A DNA stretch of 64,000 nt, from contig OX337231.1 of assembly GCA_946965045.2 (NCBI GenBank), forward strand, positions 744,001-808,000, given 5' to 3'. The DNA comes from Epithemia pelagica (lineage: Eukaryota; Protista; Bacillariophyta). The position numbers were made by a program, and so were the translations under genes. Positions 27,566 to 58,059 of the stretch are shown here, piece after piece (positions within the stretch are counted from its first letter, which is position 1; the number at the start of each line of letters is the position of its first letter). Below the pieces are notes generated by a model. It was not told the DNA's origin. It saw only the letters and a program-made list of their open reading frames with translations, and searched no databases.

Positions 27566-28575
27566 AAACCATCAGTTCCATGTGAGTCAACCGTTGGTTC
27601 ACAACAAAGTGGCTTCGATATGACTTTGGAAAGCAGCAAACGACTCACCTGATTCGTTCATTGTGTTTAAAGTGTTCGAAGCTCAAGCAGAATTCTTTTT
27701 TCTTCTTCTTCTTCTCTGCAGAACCACACAACACAAAACCTTTGGTGTGAGACCCGAGAAGACAATTCAAGAGCAACAACTAACAGCAACAAACAACCAC
27801 CACCACCACGACACACGCGTGTCGTCGTCTTTTTTTTTCAGAAACAAAAAAAGTGCCATTGGCGAGATCATGGTCAACACTGTCCCCACACAAACTCCCG
27901 TGTTCCAACTCTTGTCGTCGTTCCCTTTTGGAAGTCCAACGTGTGTCGGAGCATGGAAGCGGGGAACAGCTCGACCGTCAGAAGACCGTCGTGAAATGGA
28001 ATGGGAATGGGTTTCATCATGATGATTGGTGGTCGAGACGAAATGGGTGTGATGTGGTGTGGTGTGGTGTGGTACTTTGGGCTCTCCCATTGCTCCGTTC
28101 TACCTACCTCGTCGTTCCGAGTGGTGCTGCTGTTGAGAGTTTGTGGACGACTCTTGGTAGTTGTTGTTGTTGTGGTTTCTTGTGGACGACAATTCGTTTT
28201 CCTGGTGCGTCCAATACTCTGGAATCCATTCGACGTCTTGTTGTTGTGGTTGTCGTGGTGCCGGTACACGCCAATCCAACACGTTTGTGGGTCGGCGAAA
28301 CAGAAGAATAAAAGGATGATGGGTCGACGTTGCTCGCCCTCCGTGTTCGTGTTGCCGTGTTGTGTATATTGTTTGGTTTGGAGTTTGGACGGACCACGAC
28401 AGGCCACAAAAAGATTGTTCCGATGCCACAGAACAACACGAAGAGCGACCACGCACAAAATTCTGAAGAGATGCGAGTTCGCGTTTTTCGTCATGATCCC
28501 CCGAATCTGGGTTTTGGGGTTTGGGGGGAACGCCACGTGTGTGGTAAGCGCGACCGCCTTGTCAGTCCCCGAATA

Positions 28576-31877: not shown

Positions 31878-33551
31878 ATGCAGAAGGCCACGATGAGTTT
31901 GATCTCCATCAGGAACAACAACAAGAATAGCAAGTTCACTTGGAAACACCACCACCCCCACAAGACGACGACAAGAAGGACGAATCGTCATGCCGGTTGG
32001 TATCGAATGGTATCCTGTGACTGGAAGCTCTTGCTGCTCATGGTTTTGATTGGACAGTTTGTGGTTGTGGTGGTCCATTTGTATCCCTGGCGCAACATGA
32101 CCATTGGTTTTCGAGGAGGAGAAGAATCGTTGCCCAGTGACATGGATTTGATTTTACAGATGCTGCATCAGAACAAAAATGAGACCCATGCGTTGTTTCC
32201 GTCGTCCTCCGCCTCCTTGTCCTCCACAGTTGACAAGGTGGAAAATGGTTCATCCTCTTCATCCCCGTTTACCGTCTTTTGGAATCTCTATCTGCCCTCG
32301 GGTCCGAATAAAGGAAGACGCACCTATGATGCTCTGCGCGAACAAGTTCATCAAGTGGCTCGATCGGCCGCCAAGGAACCGCTGGTGCTCAAGTATGTCA
32401 CAATTGGCAATCAGTCTCTCTTCATGAACCATCAAATCATGACCAATTGGGTCAATCTGGCCTGTGCCAAACATTCCAATCTCAAATGTCATCACGTCAA
32501 GCATGTCGCAAGAGGCTTTGAAGAAGTCACGCTGGATGAATTGTACGACCATTGTCTGGCAAAGGGTGACAATGACTACACTGCCAAGGTGGCCTATATT
32601 CACAACAAGGGGTCCTACAATCCTCAGGGTACCTATGATAACGAACGAAAGAAGTATATACGTCAAGATTCGTGGCGACGACATGCTACCGCAGCTGCCC
32701 TCCATCCCCACTGTCGTCACTTGTCGAATTCCTCGTCTTCTTCTTCTTCTTTTGTGGAGAACAACCAGACGAACAACACATGCAACGTGTGTGGTTTGTT
32801 TTTTGTTCCCCTTCCCTAGAATCATGCACCGGGCAACTTTTGGACAGCTCGTTGCGATTACATTCGTCAATTGAAGCGACCATCCTTGTTTCGTCAGCAA
32901 ATGGATCACTTGGTGTACCATGTCTATGTACCCATGGTAAAACGGGGTCGTCTCCTCGTGTCGATTGATCGCACGTTCATGGGTCACTTGCGGTGGTCCA
33001 TGGAAGCCTGGGTGGGATCGCATCCTAGCGTGCGACCCTGTGACATGTCCATGGAAGCAGATCTCAAAGAGTGGATCCATGAGACTCGTCTCAATGTGAC
33101 GGCTCCCATTGGCCAACCGGATCATACCGACAAGGTGTTGAAGTGGGCCTTGTTTCCCCGACATGACTGGGAGACCCTGGTGGCTCATTCAAACCCAGTA
33201 TTCGATCCATCCCAATTTGAAAACGTCCAGACTCGACTACGAGATTATAATATATTGGGTGGTATGCTGTTGCGATGGAACGCTGTCTATGGCGAAACAA
33301 CCATGCCTCCCGACGATTCCTGGATCTGGTCCTTTTATCCGGATGGACCTGTGTGGAAACAAGGAGTGCAACAACATGGTATGGCCAATGTCTATGAAGC
33401 CATTTCCAAACCCTATTGGCCGGCCTCTCAACAACGCATCGCAGAACGAGTCGCGTTGGCGCCACGCCCAGTATACGTATACAACAGGAGTAAAACAAGA
33501 CACTCCACTATCATCCGCAAAAGACTTGTCGGGCCCCGGACAAAAATATGA
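31878..33551 (+). pseudogene. Uncharacterised type II membrane protein, paralogue 3, with a premature stop
   Basis: Colinear with paralogue 1; TAG at 32817-32819 where the other copies have TGG (PLPWNH); the frame continues (NHAPGNFWTARCDY...). Confidence 0.85.
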
Positions 33552-43996: not shown

Positions 43997-46116
43997 CACG
44001 ATGGACTCGACGTCTTGCTTTCATTTTGAGGCCATAGGAGCGTACCGACTGTCTCAAACGAGGTTTTGGCGGTCTTGGTGGAGTGCTCACAGCACGAGTA
44101 GCTGTGGCTCCAGACTTGGAGTCTTGCTCGACCAGGCTCATGGCACAACAAAGGCCTGTGAACAAGGCGAGATACAGTAGGAATAACCACGGCAGATAAA
44201 GCCAAAATAGGTCCCCCATCCCCCTCATGAGCGCACAGTCGAGTAAGGATGAGAAGATAGAGGTCGCCCAGGTTTCCCTCCTGGGACCATAGCGATGATA
44301 GGGGCGGCCTACACCAGATGGACCGTCCAAAGACGCCACCCAGCGGCCACCCCATCAGGAGAAATGCTCCACGAGACTGCGGAGCGACTGGTCGACGGAG
44401 CGAGCCACATTTGCGACTGCAGCATCGACCTCAGCGCGATTGACAGTAGAACCAGCCACAGTACCAGTCGCTCCGGTGAGCGTGCTGGTCGTGCTGGCGC
44501 CGTCGGCTCGCGCGGCATGAGCACTCGCGTCTTGCTTGGAAGAATGCGTCCAATCCGGAACCCAGCGATGCGTGCGATGGTTGTAGAACATAATATGTTT
44601 TCCATCAATCACGCGTCGATTTCGCTCGTCCGACTTTGGAGGCGCCCACTTTCCGGATGCACCACCTGCTCCAGAATTTGAGGAACTCGTCCCATTGGCT
44701 GCCTTCTTAGAACCAAACTTGTCTTTGTTCGCAGCAATCTTCTATTCGTTGCGGGGTTCCGTGCACTTCGGTGCTGTACGTCCCGGCTTTCCACAATTCC
44801 AATAAATTGGTTGGGACTTGCCATTGCCCAAAGAGGCAGTATTGGCAGCTTTCTTGGCATCTTCTTGGGCATTGAACACGGAGTTCTTTCCCTTCGTTTT
44901 AGAACCGTGCCAGTCATTACTGCTGCATAATTCATTATACTTAGTTTCGGCTAAGCGAAGCAAAACATCAACTTCCAATCCACCAGTGTCATCAGGATCA
45001 CCTTGAAGTTTACCAATGTCCCGTGCCATTGTGTAAGTTTGCTCGATATAGCGGAAATAGGAGTTAAATTTGCAAACGGATGAAGTTTGCATGACCTTTA
45101 GCCTTTAGCACTTGCTGATTAAAACGCTCTGGAACTTTCTTGACCCATTTCAAGCGCTTGTGTGCACCACGGATTAAACTTACAACACAAAGAACGTTTT
45201 CACCTTGAAACTCATTGATCTTCAAATTCTTAACCAAGTCTTTCAAATGATCAATAGCGGCTTCCGAACTTGAAACCAGAATGTTCATCATAATGACGAA
45301 GAGCAGCGGACCCCCTTGTTGAATGGTAGGGTAAGTCTCAAACTGTTCGTAGCATTTTTCAAACAGACTTTGAGTCATGTTATTTTCCAGATGCTTGTAG
45401 GTTAGTACCAAATTCTCCCGGTACCAATCCTTCTTGGTCCAGCGGCGATACCATTCACAACTGGCTGCAACTTCATCGGGAGTAACTTCCTCATAATTTA
45501 AATATAGATCTACAGTACGAGACTCAATACTCCGGGATCCCTTCAACTTGGGGAACACAATCGTGAATACGTCATGCATATCGTAAACCATATGCATGTC
45601 CTTGGTCTTGGAAATCATGATGGCAGTGTTATAACACTCATCCAACTTCTTTTCATCGGTCAAACTCATACTCGTGAAAGTATATTTCGTTTGCGATGTC
45701 TTCACGGCTTCCTTGAAGAGATCTTGTTTCTTCTTCGAGGACATCTTCTCCCTGTTCTCTTTCCGATATAGAGGTCCTTGATCCGCGACACCATATCCCC
45801 TTGAACCTGGTTCCACCAGCTCAACTGCCAGTCCCCCAACCATGAATTAGGTATCTGTATCTAACGGGTAGTCATCGCTCTTTGAACTCTTATCCGAATT
45901 GTTTTCATCGCTTGTTCTTCTTTGTCTTCTCTCATTAAGACCCTGAAGCGTTTCGTCGAGTGTTCGGAATCCAAAGTCGGATTCCCGATTGCCGGTTCCA
46001 GTCTGGTCTTCCGCTGAGGCGTCTTGATAGTCCTCATCGTCTCCCGTGTTAGCCGGTGCAGCACCTGAAGCGGGTGAAACATTTGCCGAGTCTTCTGCTC
46101 GCGCCATTGTTCTCAC
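43997..46116 (-). pseudogene. Outer Copia gag region (stops and frameshifts)
   Basis: QQGGPLLF gag motif in 45064-45843; degenerate zinc knuckle YWNCGKPGRTAPKC in 44742-45092; in-frame stop at 45847-45849. Confidence 0.8.
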
Positions 46117-51671: not shown

Positions 51672-54194
51672 TTAGGTGGATTTGGAGTCGCATCCCCAAA
51701 GGACGTCTTCCACGGCCGAAGATTGATCTTGCAGGTACTGCCTCAAATCAAAGCAAAAGGGCTGCTCACCAAAATTGCAGTGGACCAAACACTTGGTATC
51801 CATTCCCACGGTGGGATACCAATCTTGTTGATAAAAGGCCTGGTCGGCATGCTGCAAATTGGTCCACGCCGGTCCCAAATAGTGGCCATTGAGCGTGTAA
51901 AAGATTTGGTGATGCAAGTAGTCAATCCCGCATCCCACCACATCGCCCGCACCAAATTTGGGACCGTACGGTCGTAACATGTGACCAGTTTCGTAAAAGA
52001 CTCCACCATCGTCGCCGTGATAGCCATAACTAAAGGAATCCCATCCGGGCATGCGAGAATGCAAGGAAAATTCATTGCACGAGAGTCCGACGGCAATGCA
52101 TTCTCGTGGGGAATTCCTGTTGGTGGTTGGTGTCGCAGTCGTAACCTCGTGTGTCTCTGCGGCCAAATGGACTTGAGGCAATGCAAACTGCTCTTCTTCT
52201 TCTTCTTCCTGGTTGTCGTCGGTTCCTCGATCACGAGCCAATCGTTGTGCTCGGAGACGTTCTTGTTCTTGCTCTTCGGATGCTGGAGGGAGAATGGTGA
52301 CTTCAAAATAATGGACCATGCGAGGCGTTACATTTTGCTCCCGCCTGCCAGTCGTGTTGTTTTTTGTACAAAAGGGAACCACAAAGGGTCGAAAGAGGGG
52401 TGTGGCTGTTGTGGTCGTCGTTGGTTCGTCCATCGGATTGGTGGAAGAGCGACGATGCGAACTTCTCGTTCTTTGAAGACGGCTGAGCAAGTGGGATGGT
52501 CGATGTCGGTGGTGGTGATGGGTGTTTCCATTCAGGACACGGAGAGATGGTGACGACGACGACGAAGCAGGCACGGCAGCATTGCGTGAGGTTGGATGAA
52601 ACAATCGTGACAAGGGACCACCACTGGATGGGTGATGATTGCCACCACAAAAGACAAGGTGAGGAATGGCTTGAAACATGGAGGAGGATTTGTGATTCTT
52701 TTTATTCTTTTCGTCCTGCAATGGCAAGGGTGTCTTCCAGGGTTGATTGGATCGAATGCATCGATCTCCTGTACCAACTGTCCCCGTATATTGCACGGCT
52801 GTTACTCCTTGGGGCATGACTTGGACCACTCTTAAGGGCGCGGCTTGGGAGGAGGATGGTTGTTGCTGTTGTTGTTGTAGCAATCGACGATGCCGTTGCA
52901 AGGAATTGGACCATCGACAGGGAAGTAGCAAATCCGTATCAATGTGGGAAGGAAAGGTGGATTGCGCCAATTGCAACACAACATTGTAGTTTAACTCTTG
53001 CGGTGTGTAACCCGACGTTACTCGACACAGATCCTCCTCCATACTACTCTCCTTGGTGAGTGTTGCCAATGGTGACACGTGCGGCCCTACCGTGTTGGTG
53101 GTGGTAATGGACACGGTCCGTGGGGTCGTAGTAGTAGTAGTAGTGACGAATCCTCGGGACGCCGTCCAGAGGCCTCGTTTGGGAGTACTGTGACTGCTGT
53201 TGGAACTCATGCCCGAGCTCACCGATTCCGCGGCATTGGTCAAATGAAACGGATGGATAGTACTATTCATGTTGCTGCTGCTGCCGTGATGAGTGTGTGG
53301 GGAAAGAACCAGACTGCACGTGTATCGTGTGGTGGTAGCCCGACACTGCGGCCATGTGACTTGCATATAAGTCTTCCACAACAAGTCCGCCTCATCACTT
53401 TGCAACAAGGTCCAAATCTTGTGGGTGGTTTGAGCCAAGGGCCTGACATTGTCTGGTGCCAAAAAGGAGCAAATGTTTAACAACACCTCATCGGGAAGAC
53501 TTGTCAAGGACCACACAAAGGGCGACGACGACGACGACGAGGTGGTGGTGGTGGGGGACGAGAAGCCATTCAAGAAATACTCATGTTCCTTCATGGTGGT
53601 CTTGTTGCCATCATGGTCCAGTAGAGGCCATTTTTCTTCTTCCTTCTCTGGTTGGTAATTTGGACCTTGCTCCAAAGGAATAACGTTGGAGACTGGTTTG
53701 GAAGAGGTTGACTGCCGTTTGGCGTCACGTTTGCGTTTCAAAGAAGATACCACCGAAAAGGGAGAATTGGATGCTTCCGAAGACGGCACAAACCGCCCTG
53801 CTGCTGCTGTAGTAGTAGAAGGAGTAGTACCTGCGGAGAGCGCAACGGTTGTGGCAGGAAGAGGAGCCAAGGGACTTTGAATCAAACTGGCCAAGACCAA
53901 GTCATTGAGACTGTTGCGAATCGTACCAATCGAGCCAGGTGGCGGAGTTTCGCGAGAAGCAGTCACAAAGGACGAGGAAGAAGACGACGATGATGGCAAT
54001 GGCACTGGAAGAACTGTCTTGGGTGGTGGAGTCATGGTCGAAAAGGATCCAACGTGGGGGCCACATGCCGACGACGAAGCCGAAAAGAAGCAAACGTCCT
54101 CTTCTTCACTTCGTTCGGCGGCATCTTCTTCCGGAACGGATGCATCAAAGGCATCCCAGGAAACCAGTCGTTGACGGGACGAAACTCGTTTCAT
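51672..54194 (-). CDS. F-box + SPRY (RanBP9/10-type) protein
   Basis: LTSLPDEVLLNICSFL (F-box); HYFEVTI, IAVGL, MPGWDSFSYGYHGDDG, YGPKFGAGDVVGCG, FYTLNG (SPRY). Confidence 0.9.
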   Translation of the reverse strand: MKRVSSRQRLVSWDAFDASVPEEDAAERSEEEDVCFFSASSSACGPHVGSFSTMTPPPKTVLPVPLPSSSSSSSSFVTASRETPPPGSIGTIRNSLNDLVLASLIQSPLAPLPATTVALSAGTTPSTTTAAAGRFVPSSEASNSPFSVVSSLKRKRDAKRQSTSSKPVSNVIPLEQGPNYQPEKEEEKWPLLDHDGNKTTMKEHEYFLNGFSSPTTTTSSSSSSPFVWSLTSLPDEVLLNICSFLAPDNVRPLAQTTHKIWTLLQSDEADLLWKTYMQVTWPQCRATTTRYTCSLVLSPHTHHGSSSNMNSTIHPFHLTNAAESVSSGMSSNSSHSTPKRGLWTASRGFVTTTTTTTPRTVSITTTNTVGPHVSPLATLTKESSMEEDLCRVTSGYTPQELNYNVVLQLAQSTFPSHIDTDLLLPCRWSNSLQRHRRLLQQQQQQPSSSQAAPLRVVQVMPQGVTAVQYTGTVGTGDRCIRSNQPWKTPLPLQDEKNKKNHKSSSMFQAIPHLVFCGGNHHPSSGGPLSRLFHPTSRNAAVPASSSSSPSLRVLNGNTHHHHRHRPSHLLSRLQRTRSSHRRSSTNPMDEPTTTTTATPLFRPFVVPFCTKNNTTGRREQNVTPRMVHYFEVTILPPASEEQEQERLRAQRLARDRGTDDNQEEEEEEQFALPQVHLAAETHEVTTATPTTNRNSPRECIAVGLSCNEFSLHSRMPGWDSFSYGYHGDDGGVFYETGHMLRPYGPKFGAGDVVGCGIDYLHHQIFYTLNGHYLGPAWTNLQHADQAFYQQDWYPTVGMDTKCLVHCNFGEQPFCFDLRQYLQDQSSAVEDVLWGCDSKST

Positions 54195-54752
54195 GGTTGG
54201 TCAATCTTTTGGTAACGCTATATATACCCTGGTATGTATTGGATCTCTCCTTGTTTTGGTGGTGGTGGTGGTTGTGGTTGTGTCTTTGGGCTTTGGGTTC
54301 TGCTCGTGAAAAAAAAGACTCTTTGTTGTATTGTATGTGTGTGTTGGTCGTTTCGCTTGCAATGAATCAATCACTCTCGGCTCATCTCATCATCATCTGT
54401 CGGCACCGCATGTCTTTTGAAAAAAGAACCAGTCAAACGCACCTGGACGGAGAAGGAAGGAACGCATGGAACAGACTGGAATGCGATCCACACAACACAC
54501 AACCAACCAGTCCAACTGTCACGGAACGCGTTTGAAGTTGGAACAAGGGTGTCAGCAGCTGCTTCGTGTTCTCCACATAAGACAGACAGCCTGCAGGCCA
54601 TCTGCTTACCATCTGGTCGTTACTGTCTGTCGCAGCGACAGGAAGGCAATCGTGGATCTGGTTTGGAATCTTGCCGGACGCCGGACACACCCACATCATC
54701 AACGGATACTCCCACCACCAAAATCGGACGACGACGAGAGGAGGAGGAAGAC

Positions 54753-55721
54753 ATGAGGATTGGATCGTTGCGGGTGGGCACCACCGCCGCACTCCTACTA
54801 CTACGTTCTTCTTCTTCTTCTTCTCGTCTCACGTATCACCTTCAGTATCCTTTGTATCCTCACCCAAAACGACTGACTCATTCGTGGCCTTGTTTCTCAG
54901 TACGGTCACTTTCGCCCCTTATTGCATCCATTCTTCCCAGCCGAAGCTGCAGCAGAACCACTCGTACTGTGGGGATTGGACTCGAGACAGTGTCCACCCA
55001 CACCACAAGAACACGAACAAGAGGAGCGCAACGACGACAACAACTACTCCTACGAACCATGTCCGTGTCGTCGTCGGAACCAGACTTTGGAAGGGATCGT
55101 TTGGGTCGTCCTCGAGCCTTGTTTTTGTACGATGGTGCCTGTGGTGTCTGAAAATTTTGTGTGGCCTTTGTGGTGGAACGCGATGCGACGGATCATGTTC
55201 GATTCAGTCCCTTGCAAACCACATTCGCCCAAACCGTGTGTCGTCAATACGGCATGCCCGCCGATTTGACCACGGGCATTCTTATTGAACCCATGTCACC
55301 ACCCAACGACGACAACAATAAGGATTCCCCAACCGCTGGACTGTGTACGGCCGCGCATCGCGATTCGACGGCCATTTTGCGCATGCTCTTGGTGTTGCAG
55401 CCCTTTTATTATCGGTGGATTGGATGGTTGGCCCTGACGCTGGTTCCCAAAGTCGTCCGCGATGCCTGTTATCAAGCCTTTGCACGGAATCGAGGAACCA
55501 TTTGGAAAGCCGTCAAGCGTGTCACGGGCATGGGGGATACCCAACTGGATGCCTATCGAACTCAAATTTTGGGCATTGCCGATATCGATCAAATTGCCGT
55601 CCAAGAACCCGGTTGGGGATTCACTCCCCAGAAGGATGCGACAACAAACGACCATGACACCAACAACAACAACAACAAGGAGAGCACCAATGTCGATACA
55701 AAGGACACCAAGCAAGACTAG
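54753..55721 (+). CDS. DCC1/DUF393-like thiol-disulfide oxidoreductase with in-frame TGA at the second Cys of DxxCxxC; predicted selenoprotein
   Basis: ORFs 54417-55151 and 55161-55721 share a frame; read-through gives LFLYDGACGV[TGA 55149-55151]KFCVAFVVERDATDHVRFSPLQT...DSTAIL...VPKVVRDACYQAFARNR, a complete DCC domain. ATG 54753 adds an Arg/Ser/Thr-rich transit-like leader; alternative ATG at 55059. Confidence 0.8.
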
Positions 55722-55790
55722 GCTTGTGCACTTTCCACACATCATAGTTTCTGACTCATTCCGTCAATCCACACCATGAGAAATCCAATC

Positions 55791-55848
55791 CACCCGAATG
55801 ACTTTGGTACCTAGAGTAGCAGCGCTGGTATATCAAATGACTATGGGA
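55791..55848 (+). promoter_or_regulatory. Candidate SECIS element in the 3' UTR
   Basis: AUGAC (55798-55802) and UGAC (55838-55841) core; 11-bp helix II (UUUGG-UACC-AG with CU-GGUA-UCAAA, two small bulges); 10-nt apical loop AGUAGCAGCG; CCC/GGG helix I. Folded by hand; the apical AA is replaced by AG. Confidence 0.6.
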
Positions 55849-56201
55849 ACGAGGCGGATGAGACTGGCGAGGCGATTGACCCATGAGACAGTGGACTACC
55901 CGTAGAATCCAGCATATTCTAGAACTCTTTCCTTTTCTAGAAACTTGAGAGCGTTGGACTGTTTGTAGAAACTGGTGTAGATACTAGAATACAAAGTGTA
56001 TACACAACCGCAGAGTGCCATGTTGGTAGGTGACTGTGGGTGGTCTATGCATGGGAGGATATAAGAAAATGTAGTTGTTGTTGGAGATGCAGCGAAGAAT
56101 GATGCGATGCAAATAGGAAGAGAAGAAAGATTGTGCAAGGAAGGCGAGAGAGCGCGTCTGTTTTCTGGTAGGAGTAGGGTGCTGGCAAAGCATTGCCAGT
56201 G

Positions 56202-57626
56202 TCACACTTGAGTTAGTTCTTGTTTTCTGGAACGAGTGTTGATATTGTCCAAGCAGTGCCGGGGTGGTTCTTGCGGAGCTGCTGTTGACGATGATGATGA
56301 TGATGACGATGATTGGAAGGATCGAGATGCGCAAGATTGTTGGTGTTGTGGTTGTGGAGGGAGACAAATCCAGGGACTTTCTCGTACCAAAATGGTCAAG
56401 GCGGTCAAATCATTACTAAAATACCGCGCCACGGTGGAGATCCACGCGTGTTGGTCGGCGGGCAATTCTCGCAATTTGCGTCGTCGTCCTTCGCGATTTA
56501 ATTTCAAAAACAAGTGCACTTGTTTCTTGTACCACGTGGCTTCCGGATCGGTCGGACACAGCATCATGTCCAAGGCTTCCAAATGCACATGGGTTTGCAA
56601 GAGCGTCAACATGGCCTTCCAAGCGCGGGCCGTCACACGTCGGGTTTTGGTCAAGTCCAAGATTTTGACGGGTGCATTGGTCTGTCCCAGACATTGGCAC
56701 AAGGCTTCGACATGAGCATCTTGTACATGGAACCGCGAAATGACGAGCCAGGAAAGATGGGACAAGGTACCCAATTGGCTGAGAGCCTGAGGAGACGAGA
56801 CTCGATCCATTTGATCCATACTTTGCAAATAATCAAACGACTCATACGACAAGCCCAATTGCAAGGATTCCAAATTCACCAAACTCGCCATGGCCTCCAA
56901 CAGGGGATCCAATGTTCCCTCCATGAGAGACTGAGAATGCTGACTCCCATCCATTCTCATGAGCGTGTCATTATCATCACCAGGATCGTGGTCCTGTGGT
57001 GCCTCTGGTTGCTCTGATTCGTCCATCCACAAAAAGGCTGGATGCAGATTGGGTAAGGAGACTCGTTTCAAGGAGGGATGATTGCGAAATCCATTGGCCA
57101 ACCGTGTCACGTCACGGCGTGATTGCAAGAGTAAGTTCCGTTCAATCCGTAAGGTGCACAAGTGTTTTGCGGTGGACAAAAATTGGGACTGCGACAAGGC
57201 CGACGCGGCATCAATGGTAGTTTTGGTATATTCCAAGGTCCCAATGGACAAGACTCGTAGATTGGTCAAGGTTGTGGCACATCGATGCAAAAAGGCGGCC
57301 AATTCGGTGGGAGAATAGCTTGAATAAAAGTAGGGCCCCAAATAGACATCGGTGACACTGGTGTTCCCAATCATGGCTTGCTCAATTTCATTCCACGACG
57401 ATTCACCCGTCTGTTCCATGGATTGCATCAACGTTAACCGAGCTAAACAGTTGAATTTCAGTCCATTTACAATCATCATGGCAGCGCCATTTGTCGGTTG
57501 TTTCGTTTGTGGTGGGGACGGTGGTGGCTTGCCTCGATACATGGAGGAGGATTTGCTGGAAGAAGGACTTCTAGCTCCACCACGACTTTTGGAATGGTTT
57601 CGGATCTTTGGTTTTCGCATCAACAT
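56202..57626 (-). CDS. Leucine-rich-repeat (RNI-like) protein
   Basis: LTNLRVLSI, HPSLKRVSL, LVNLESLQL, VKILDL repeats and C-terminal FLKLNREGRR...LVRESP; the start is uncertain (the ORF extends to 57818). Confidence 0.55.
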   Translation of the reverse strand: MLMRKPKIRNHSKSRGGARSPSSSKSSSMYRGKPPPSPPQTKQPTNGAAMMIVNGLKFNCLARLTLMQSMEQTGESSWNEIEQAMIGNTSVTDVYLGPYFYSSYSPTELAAFLHRCATTLTNLRVLSIGTLEYTKTTIDAASALSQSQFLSTAKHLCTLRIERNLLLQSRRDVTRLANGFRNHPSLKRVSLPNLHPAFLWMDESEQPEAPQDHDPGDDNDTLMRMDGSQHSQSLMEGTLDPLLEAMASLVNLESLQLGLSYESFDYLQSMDQMDRVSSPQALSQLGTLSHLSWLVISRFHVQDAHVEALCQCLGQTNAPVKILDLTKTRRVTARAWKAMLTLLQTHVHLEALDMMLCPTDPEATWYKKQVHLFLKLNREGRRRKLRELPADQHAWISTVARYFSNDLTALTILVRESPWICLPPQPQHQQSCASRSFQSSSSSSSSSTAAPQEPPRHCLDNINTRSRKQELTQV

Positions 57627-58059
57627 ATTCACACAGGGTGTCGTCTCCTCTCTGGTTCTCGTCTCTCGATATCTCCTCGTTGTTTTGCTTCCCTTTTGGT
57701 AGGTACCAATTTTGGGACACTGGGCTTGGGATTGGGATTGCTCGTCGTTTGCGGAGGAAGAAGAAAAGAACGAGAAAAAAATCTCCTCCTGTCTGGATGA
57801 TCCACATTGATCACGCATGTGACTTCCGCTTCGATCTTTCTCGCGCTAGACACTGCCCCAGGAAATCTCCCATCTCTTCCCGAAAATAGGGGGGGAGAAG
57901 GCAGAGGAGAGGGGGAGAGGAGGGGGAGAGAGAAGGAGAGAAGAAGGAGATTCCGTAAGTCAGATTCCTTCATGAAATCGATCCGCGTATTGCTCGCAGT
58001 CTCACGTTTGTTTCCTCTGACGTATGAAATGTTCTAGGAAGCTCCAAGCTTCCCTCAGA

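What the first reader, a model, noticed from the sequence alone, without database searches (positions are those of the whole stretch)
54753..55721. Probable new selenoprotein: DCC1/DUF393 oxidoreductase with a CxxU motif
Seen: tac gat ggt gcc tgt ggt gtc TGA aaa ttt tgt gtg gcc ttt. The only interruption in an otherwise complete DCC domain falls exactly on the second Cys of the family DxxCxxC signature; spacing to the downstream VxF...D...F.PLQ is preserved, so no intron or frameshift is needed. Known: eukaryotic Sec is encoded by UGA with a 3'-UTR SECIS, usually replaces a redox Cys in CxxC-type motifs, and diatoms have selenoproteomes. A TGC/TGT>TGA nonsense hit at precisely the catalytic codon would be a coincidence, and a SECIS-like hairpin follows. 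I do not recall DCC1/DUF393 among described selenoprotein families, but could not check. The Arg/Ser/Thr-rich leader suggests an organellar location. Standard gene callers would split or truncate this gene.
Basis: partly seen in the sequence, partly recalled or inferred. Interest (0 to 1): 0.92.

Follow-up and report, generated by a model that had tools for sequence, protein, structure and literature searches.

The report
New diatom selenoprotein: DCC1-like CxxU oxidoreductase
A diatom gene for a thioredoxin-like "DCC1" redox enzyme has its second active-site cysteine written as UGA, which is almost certainly read as selenocysteine, and I found no published description of this protein family as a selenoprotein.

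Summary
An ORF starts at ATG 54753, has one in-frame TGA at 55149-55151 and ends at TAG 55719-55721. The part after the TGA is a Pfam DCC1-like domain. The TGA falls on the second Cys of the D-x-x-C-x-x-C motif, giving C-G-V-U.

- All 24 homologous loci I fetched, plus a culture transcript, carry TGA at this column, never TAA or TAG. Protein conservation continues on both sides.
- Six relatives in the protein database have Cys there. Eleven loci also have TGA at the first Cys (UxxU).
- Sec and Cys forms are interleaved on the tree.
- Both alleles of this organism carry the TGA.
- A SECIS-like element lies at 55793-55847, 76 nt after the stop. It has helix I, an AUGA/GA core and helix II, but no apical AA motif.
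- Its core heptamer GAATGA[AC] is present in 14 of 17 Sec-form 3'UTRs and in 0 of 2 Cys-form 3'UTRs. About 0.07 per UTR is expected by chance.
- The 102-residue basic leader is coding, because all indels between the alleles are multiples of three. It looks like an organellar presequence.

Not shown: transcription in this organism, selenium incorporation, localisation, and the Sec machinery of this genome.

No paper I could search names DCC/DUF393 as a selenoprotein. I rate it a new member of a known kind.

The parts
54753..55058 (+). N-terminal leader of 102 codons, probably an organellar (mitochondrial-type) presequence
   Evidence: It is in frame with the domain. It has 1 acidic, 16 basic and 30 Ser/Thr residues in 102. 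All indels between the window and allele L001 inside the ORF are multiples of 3 (3, 3, 9, 6, 3, 12), against 1 of 7 upstream of the ATG. Localisation was not tested.
55059..55148 (+). Start of the DCC1-like domain (second in-frame ATG at 55059), with strand beta-1 and D-G-A-C-G-V ahead of the Sec codon
   Evidence: Translation. The segment R-P-R-A-x-F-x-Y-D-G-x-C-G-V is conserved in all homologous loci. First Cys codon is TGT at 55140-55142.
55149..55151 (+). In-frame TGA, the proposed selenocysteine codon at the second Cys of the CxxC motif
   Evidence: TGA in 24 of 24 loci at this column and TGC/TGT in the Cys forms. It corresponds to Pfam profile position 10. It is present in both alleles.
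55152..55718 (+). Rest of the DCC1-like domain and a low-complexity C-terminal tail (189 codons)
   Evidence: Pfam PF04134, E 2.5e-8. 38 homologues with E down to 1e-115, with 17 invariant columns.
55719..55721 (+). Stop codon TAG
55793..55847 (+). SECIS-like element. Helix I is 55793-55796 paired with 55844-55847. AUGA is 55798-55801. Helix II is 55803-55809 paired with 55831-55837. The 3' GA is 55839-55840. The apical part lacks the AA motif.
   Evidence: The unconstrained RNAfold minimum-energy structure gives this architecture. The strict core pattern has about 0.009 chance hits per 300 nt in this window. The heptamer GAATGAC at 55796 is shared with 13 other Sec-form 3'UTRs. It is the top local hit of a covariance model built only from other loci, at 9.8 bits and E 0.18.
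55791..56054 (.). 264-nt block that is 100% identical between the two alleles and starts at the SECIS
   Evidence: Window versus L001 alignment. Flanks are 70-92% identical and the block is 100%. A single shared unitig covers 55791-56054. The reason for conservation beyond the SECIS is unexplained.

Best explanation
This is an intact nuclear gene of a diatom for a DCC1-like (PF04134) thioredoxin-fold thiol-disulfide oxidoreductase. Its redox motif is C-G-V-U: the UGA at 55149-55151 is decoded as selenocysteine, directed by a SECIS element in the 3'UTR (55793-55847). The product would be about 322 residues, counted from ATG 54753. It has a basic, acid-poor N-terminal presequence, so it probably acts in an organelle, most likely the mitochondrion. 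There the Cys/Sec pair would cycle between a selenol/thiol form and a selenenylsulfide form to reduce disulfides or oxidised targets, as the Cys-Cys pair does in other DCC1-like proteins. Shown here: the gene anatomy, the Sec/Cys alternation, selection on both sides of the UGA, and the conserved SECIS core. Inferred: Sec insertion itself, the catalytic cycle and the localisation.
For: (1) All 24 fetched loci have TGA at the second-Cys column, never TAA or TAG. Neighbouring codons vary synonymously and the protein is conserved for about 150 residues downstream.
(2) Cys forms (C-G-V-C) exist in P0002 (Epithemia clementina), P0006, P0013, P0015, P0032 and P0034, with TGC/TGT codons.
(3) Sec and Cys states are interleaved on the tree. 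For example, L005 (CxxU) is sister to P0006 (CxxC) at 99/93 support.
(4) Eleven loci also have TGA at the first Cys.
(5) TGA also serves as the ordinary terminator of several of these same genes, so this is context-dependent recoding and not a reassigned code.
(6) An MMETSP culture transcript (L025) keeps the TGA, so in that species it is not spliced out.
(7) SECIS. The strict pattern (AUGA, at least 6 bp of helix II, GA, at least 4 bp of helix I) is found in 8 of 16 3'UTRs. It is found in 0 of 16 antisense, 0 of 16 CDS, and a mean of 0.15 in shuffles. GAATGA[AC] is found in 14 of 17 Sec-form UTRs, 0 of 2 Cys-form UTRs, 1 of 17 antisense and 0 of 17 upstream. A covariance model built without the window finds L007 de novo at E 3e-7 and ranks the window site first locally.
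(8) Both alleles carry TGA, and the region from the SECIS onward is identical between them.
(9) The AlphaFold model of the Cys homologue P0002 (pLDDT 87.5) places CxxC between strand beta-1 and the N-terminus of helix alpha-1, as in thioredoxin-fold redox proteins.
(10) Surveyed diatom genomes carry 20-44 selenoprotein genes, and Thalassiosira has tRNA-Sec (PMC7539508 and PMC2375036).
Against: Rfam SECIS models give no hit in the window or in any homologous locus, even at E up to 10. The window's SECIS lacks the unpaired apical AA (or CC). Its 3' core reads U-GA-C, where the published consensus is KGAW (PMC3753652). The covariance-model score for the window site is weak, at 9.8 bits and E 0.18 in 6 kb. 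The model did not find it in the 64-kb scan with default filters. No run of known RNA type was shown to cover the gene in this organism. The runs laid are of unrecorded kind. The Sec machinery of this genome could not be examined. Only unchecked scan notes and the general literature speak for it.
Confidence: 0.88

Rival explanations
1. The UGA is read through by a near-cognate or suppressor tRNA (Trp, Cys or Arg) and not by tRNA-Sec. The protein would be full length but contain no selenium.
For: The window's SECIS is non-canonical: it has no apical AA and gets no Rfam hit. Sec insertion was not measured.
Against: The recoded column alternates only with Cys and sits in a redox CxxC motif. A conserved AUGA/GA kink-turn-type core is present in Sec-form 3'UTRs and absent from the two Cys-form 3'UTRs examined. 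Several relatives have canonical AA-bearing SECIS (L005, L009, L018).
Confidence: 0.05
2. The gene is a pseudogene or nonsense allele. Translation stops at codon 133 and the DCC domain is not made.
For: Gene callers treat it this way. The database proteins P0001, P0003, P0004 and others start just after the TGA.
Against: TGA is fixed at this column in 24 loci that are only 36-58% identical in protein. Strong conservation and 17 invariant residues lie downstream. Both alleles keep it, and the domain diverges by about 1.6% against about 10% or more in the flanks.
Confidence: 0.02
3. The TGA is an assembly or sequencing error for TGT/TGC.
For: None found.
Against: Unitigs from several public runs of the organism match 55102-55647 exactly, and the second allele has the same codon. 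One caveat: one of those runs may be the assembly's own source.
Confidence: 0.01
4. It is a true selenoprotein gene, but translation starts at ATG 55059. The product would then be a roughly 220-residue cytosolic protein, and the upstream 102 codons would be 5'UTR.
For: Many homologues begin 20-35 residues before the motif, as ATG 55059 would. In run X5 the depth is about 0 at 54371-54796 and 159 from 54861. The kind of that run is unknown and holes prove nothing.
Against: All six indels between the alleles inside 54753-55151 are multiples of 3, against 1 of 7 upstream. The frame is open. The composition is presequence-like. Other homologues (P0006, P0009, P0013) also have basic N-terminal extensions.
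Confidence: 0.2

Closest known systems
Thioredoxin-fold CxxU selenoproteins (SELENOW, SELENOT, SELENOH, SELENOM and related)
   Same: Sec replaces the C-terminal Cys of a CxxC-type motif at the start of helix alpha-1. The UGA is decoded through a 3'UTR SECIS. Cys-containing orthologues exist. UxxU variants are also known: SELENOW in amphioxus and Ostreococcus (PMC7539508).
   Different: It belongs to a different sequence family (PF04134, with no Rdx/Sep15 similarity). It carries a long C-terminal helical extension with a conserved F-A-R-N-R-G-x-I-W block. The SECIS of the window copy lacks the apical AA.
DCC1-like / DUF393 thiol-disulfide oxidoreductases (Arabidopsis DCC1, bacterial YuxK)
   Same: Pfam PF04134 membership, the N-terminal D-x-x-C-x-x-C signature, and a predicted thioredoxin-like fold. 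Arabidopsis DCC1 is described as a functional thioredoxin that affects complex I and mitochondrial ROS (PMC6603150), which fits the presequence seen here.
   Different: I found no member of this family described as containing Sec. Here the second Cys is Sec, and in relatives both are.
Selenoprotein L (UxxU, proposed diselenide)
   Same: Relatives of the window gene (L008-L012, L014-L018, L023) have U-G-V-U, with two Sec residues in one redox motif.
   Different: SelL is peroxiredoxin-like. The window copy itself is CxxU, not UxxU.

Membership tests
DCC1-like thiol-disulfide oxidoreductase (Pfam PF04134 / DUF393) | Match to the family HMM above the curated cut-off | tested here: met
   The piece after the TGA scores 35.6 bits against 27.8, covering profile positions 14-111 of 113. 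Cys homologues score 64-72 bits from profile position 2.
DCC1-like thiol-disulfide oxidoreductase (Pfam PF04134 / DUF393) | N-terminal D-x-x-C-x-x-C redox signature | tested here: met
   The window reads D-G-A-C-G-V-U, with the TGA at the second-Cys column. Met only if U is accepted in place of C.
DCC1-like thiol-disulfide oxidoreductase (Pfam PF04134 / DUF393) | Thioredoxin-like fold with CxxC at the N-terminus of helix alpha-1 | tested here: inconclusive
   The AlphaFold model of Cys homologue P0002 (pLDDT 87.5) shows beta1-CxxC-alpha1-beta2-alpha2-beta3-beta4. Foldseek finds only weak matches (E 0.04 or worse) to GST, thioredoxin-related and tryparedoxin chains. No solved relative was found by sequence.
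DCC1-like thiol-disulfide oxidoreductase (Pfam PF04134 / DUF393) | Thiol-disulfide oxidoreductase activity | not testable with these tools
   Needs an enzyme assay.
Eukaryotic selenoprotein gene | In-frame UGA at a column that is Cys in homologues, with conservation on both sides | tested here: met
   TGA in 24 of 24 loci plus the L025 transcript, six Cys forms, and states interleaved on the tree.
Eukaryotic selenoprotein gene | SECIS element in the 3'UTR with an AUGA...GA kink-turn core flanked by helices I and II | tested here: met
   Window 55793-55847. Family-wide enrichment against antisense, CDS, shuffles and Cys forms.
Eukaryotic selenoprotein gene | Conserved unpaired AA (rarely CC) in the apical loop or bulge of the SECIS | tested here: not met
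   The window, L002, L004 and the L010-L016 clade lack it. L005, L009 and L018 have it. Consensus taken from PMC3753652.
Eukaryotic selenoprotein gene | Match to a curated SECIS model (Rfam) | tested here: not met
   No SECIS hit at E up to 10 in the window or in 17 loci. The model also misses the canonical-looking elements, so this negative result carries little weight.
Eukaryotic selenoprotein gene | Sec machinery in the same genome (tRNA-Sec, eEFSec, SBP2, PSTK, SecS, SPS2) | not testable with these tools
   Only this window is readable, and it holds no tRNA gene. Unchecked scan notes report SPS2, GPx, SelK, SelH and SelW genes in this genome. The literature reports 20-44 selenoprotein genes per surveyed diatom genome.
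Eukaryotic selenoprotein gene | Selenium incorporated into the protein | not testable with these tools
   Needs 75Se labelling or MS.

The most novel reading that the evidence does not exclude
DCC1-like proteins form a previously undescribed eukaryotic selenoprotein family that is widespread in marine diatoms and their relatives. It switches repeatedly between CxxC, CxxU and UxxU (a possible diselenide) forms. Many of its members are served by SECIS elements without the apical AA motif, which may be why SECIS-first pipelines missed it.
Probability: 0.6. Interest if true: 0.7.

Novelty: new member of a known kind. Interest (0 to 1): 0.62.

Why it matters
It would add a family to the eukaryotic selenoproteome and to diatom selenium biology. 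Diatoms are major marine primary producers and many need selenium.

It would correct a systematic annotation error. Databases hold this gene as N-terminally truncated ORFs, or as code-4 translations with Trp at the Sec position.

It would offer a natural series of CxxC, CxxU and UxxU versions of one enzyme for studying what Sec contributes to catalysis.

It would also supply a set of working SECIS elements that depart from the AA rule, which would be useful for improving SECIS predictors.

The link to Arabidopsis DCC1 suggests a role in mitochondrial redox and ROS control that could be tested in a transformable diatom.

Tried and rejected
- Rfam scans of the window and of 17 loci gave no SECIS hit at any threshold. 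They also miss the canonical-looking elements, so I treat them as uninformative.
- Covariance model R1, built from 12 homologous SECIS, is dominated by one clade with a long apical stem. It finds L007 and only weakly L025, and the window site only with filters off (E 0.18). It does not find L009, L018, L003 or L023.
- MAFFT could not align the short-type SECIS elements, so I built no second model.
- The pair counts on alignment A4 (95% paired in helix II, every pair with compensatory changes) are biased. The elements were chosen for their pairing, so I rely on the selection-free tests instead.
- RNA evidence for this organism failed. The runs that hold the locus have no recorded library type, and the one metatranscriptome only holds a diverged relative that does not cover the TGA.
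- No SECIS was settled for L003 (a possible GUGA-type element), L023 or L025.
- PDB sequence search and NCBIfam gave nothing.
- The organism's name was not obtained.

Full report
**Observation.** ATG 54753, TGA 55149-55151 and TAG 55719-55721 are in one frame. The 189 residues after the TGA match Pfam PF04134 (DCC1-like thiol-disulfide oxidoreductase) at 35.6 bits against a cut-off of 27.8, covering profile positions 14-111. The full-length Cys homologue P0002 matches the same profile from position 2. That places its two cysteines at profile positions 7 and 10, and the window's TGA at position 10.

**Comparative evidence for recoding.** A protein search with the downstream piece returned 38 relatives.
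- Several are full length with C-G-V-C: P0002 from the diatom Epithemia clementina, P0006, P0013, P0015, P0032 and P0034.
- Many others begin just after the Sec column, as expected if a gene caller stopped at the TGA.
- Two JGI proteins have Trp at that column. Their DNA shows that the Trp is a TGA translated with code 4.
- A scan of metagenome contigs added 19 loci.
- In all 24 loci (the window and L001-L023) the codon at the second-Cys column is TGA, never TAA or TAG. The neighbouring Tyr, Asp, Gly and Val codons vary synonymously, and the protein stays conserved to its end.
- Eleven loci also have TGA at the first Cys, giving U-G-V-U.
- Five of these genes end in an ordinary TGA stop, so this is context-dependent recoding and not a changed genetic code.
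- A transcript of an MMETSP culture (L025) keeps the TGA. The Cys forms use TGC or TGT.
- On a maximum-likelihood tree the CxxC, CxxU and UxxU states are interleaved. For example, L005 (CxxU) is sister to P0006 (CxxC) at 99/93 support, and L013 (CxxU) is nested among UxxU sequences.

Repeated Sec/Cys exchange of this kind is the usual signature of a genuine selenoprotein family.

**The window's own organism.** Contigs of public runs of the same organism reproduce 55102-55647 without a difference. They also show a second allele that matches locus L001, which is 94% identical in protein. L001 has the same TGA. So the codon is neither an assembly error nor private to one haplotype. The library type of these runs is not recorded. 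I therefore cannot claim transcription in this organism.

**SECIS.** A hairpin begins 76 nt after the stop. In an unconstrained RNAfold prediction it has this layout:

| Part | Coordinates |
|---|---|
| Helix I | 55793-55796 paired with 55844-55847 |
| AUGA | 55798-55801 |
| Helix II | 55803-55809 paired with 55831-55837 |
| 3' GA | 55839-55840 |

Equivalent elements lie 18-170 nt after the stop in most homologous loci. Their helix II sequences are quite different from one another, but they share a core of G-A-AUGA-[C/A] ... [C/U]-GA.

I chose those elements for their pairing, so the pair counts are biased. I rely instead on three tests that involve no such selection.
- A strict pattern (AUGA, at least 6 contiguous pairs of helix II, GA, at least 4 pairs of helix I) is found in 8 of 16 distinct 3'UTRs. 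It is found in 0 of 16 on the antisense strand, 0 of 16 in coding sequence, and a mean of 0.15 (maximum 2) in dinucleotide shuffles.
- In the whole window, both strands, the strict pattern occurs 4 times. That corresponds to about 0.009 expected per 300 nt.
- The heptamer GAATGA[AC] is present on the sense strand within 400 nt of the stop in 14 of 17 Sec-form loci. It is present in 1 of 17 antisense, 0 of 17 upstream and 0 of 2 Cys-form loci. About 0.07 is expected per UTR.

A covariance model built only from other loci finds L007 de novo (E 3e-7). With filters off it ranks the window element first in 54000-57000, but weakly, at 9.8 bits and E 0.18.

The two alleles are 100% identical over 55791-56054, a block that starts at the SECIS. 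The first 70 nt of the 3'UTR and the sequence beyond 56054 are only 70-92% identical.

Several points weigh against the SECIS reading.
- Rfam's SECIS models hit nothing anywhere.
- The window element lacks the unpaired apical AA.
- Its 3' core reads U-GA-C, where the published consensus is KGAW.

Relatives L005, L009 and L018 do have a canonical AA, and Rfam misses those too. I conclude that this is a real SECIS with a non-canonical apical part. I hold that with less confidence than the conclusion that the UGA is recoded.

**Gene model and protein.**
- Inside 54753-55151 all six indels between the alleles are multiples of three (3, 3, 9, 6, 3, 12). Upstream of the ATG only one of seven is.
- The leader has 1 acidic, 16 basic and 30 Ser/Thr residues in 102.
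- Other homologues also carry basic N-terminal extensions.

So the leader is translated and looks like an organellar presequence. I could not run a targeting predictor. A start at ATG 55059 remains a minority alternative.

An AlphaFold model of the Cys homologue P0002 (pLDDT 87.5) shows beta1, then CxxC at the N-terminus of alpha1, followed by beta2-alpha2-beta3-beta4 and a helical C-terminal extension. Foldseek gives only weak matches, all to thioredoxin-fold proteins. No relative has a solved structure by sequence.

**Mechanism.** By analogy with CxxU selenoproteins of the thioredoxin fold and with DCC1-like proteins, the Cys/Sec pair would form a reversible selenenylsulfide while reducing disulfides or oxidised targets. 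Arabidopsis DCC1 is reported as a functional thioredoxin that affects complex I and mitochondrial ROS (PMC6603150). That fits a mitochondrial role here. All of this paragraph is inference.

**Novelty.** I found no paper that combines DUF393, DCC or YuxK with selenoproteins. The following sources do not name the family:
- the survey of 137 algae, which lists 42 families and gives them in its abbreviations (PMC7539508);
- the 2007 eukaryotic selenoproteome paper (PMC2375036);
- the GOS analysis (PMC2398784);
- a 2026 review of prokaryotic selenoproteomes (PMC13188914).

Figures and the SPDB and SelenoDB databases could not be checked, so prior description is not excluded. The algal survey also has an unexplained "Hypo" family.

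The mechanism is the standard one and the CxxC-to-CxxU change is the commonest type. I therefore rate this a new member of a known kind. The added points of interest are the UxxU relatives and the AA-less SECIS elements.

Other notes from this scan, which are unchecked, report SPS2, GPx, SelK, SelH and a UxxU SelW in the same genome. They agree with a working Sec system, but I did not test them.

Noticed in passing
L008-L012, L014-L018, L023 (for example L008:601-615): Eleven homologous loci (seven distinct) have TGA at both Cys columns, giving a U-G-V-U motif with two selenocysteines and a possible diselenide. L013, which is CxxU, is nested among them on the tree.
   Followed up: partly
L008:1141-1207 and L008:1426-1491: One UxxU locus has two well-formed SECIS-like elements in the same 3'UTR, 68 and 353 nt after the stop. 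L004 also has a second GAATGA[AC] heptamer at 1438.
   Followed up: no
window 55855-56054: The block that is identical between the alleles runs about 200 nt beyond the SECIS. It contains a TTCTAGAA...TTCTAGAA palindromic hairpin near 55917-55945. It may belong to the 3' ends of this gene and of the convergent minus-strand gene (ORF 56202-57818). The reason for the conservation is unexplained.
   Followed up: no
window 54300-56400 versus L001: Two alleles of the organism differ by up to 30% in 50-nt bins and by many indels outside the DCC domain. Different runs carry different allele combinations, which suggests a highly heterozygous or polymorphic diatom.
   Followed up: partly
P0007, P0009 (L003, L004); P0001, P0003, P0004 and others: Public protein sets hold this family either as N-terminally truncated ORFs that start after the TGA, or as code-4 translations with Trp at the Sec column. 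In L004 the true TGA stop was also read through.
   Followed up: yes
window 28316-28382 (+), 56712-56762 (+), 45525-45578 (-), 32389-32488 (-): These are other matches to my strict SECIS core pattern, plus one weak covariance-model match (E 1.7). Their number is about what chance gives. I did not check them for upstream genes with an in-frame TGA.
   Followed up: no
L007:849-980: The SECIS of this locus has the same core and helix II as the L010-L016 clade but an apical insertion of about 125 nt, far longer than usual.
   Followed up: partly
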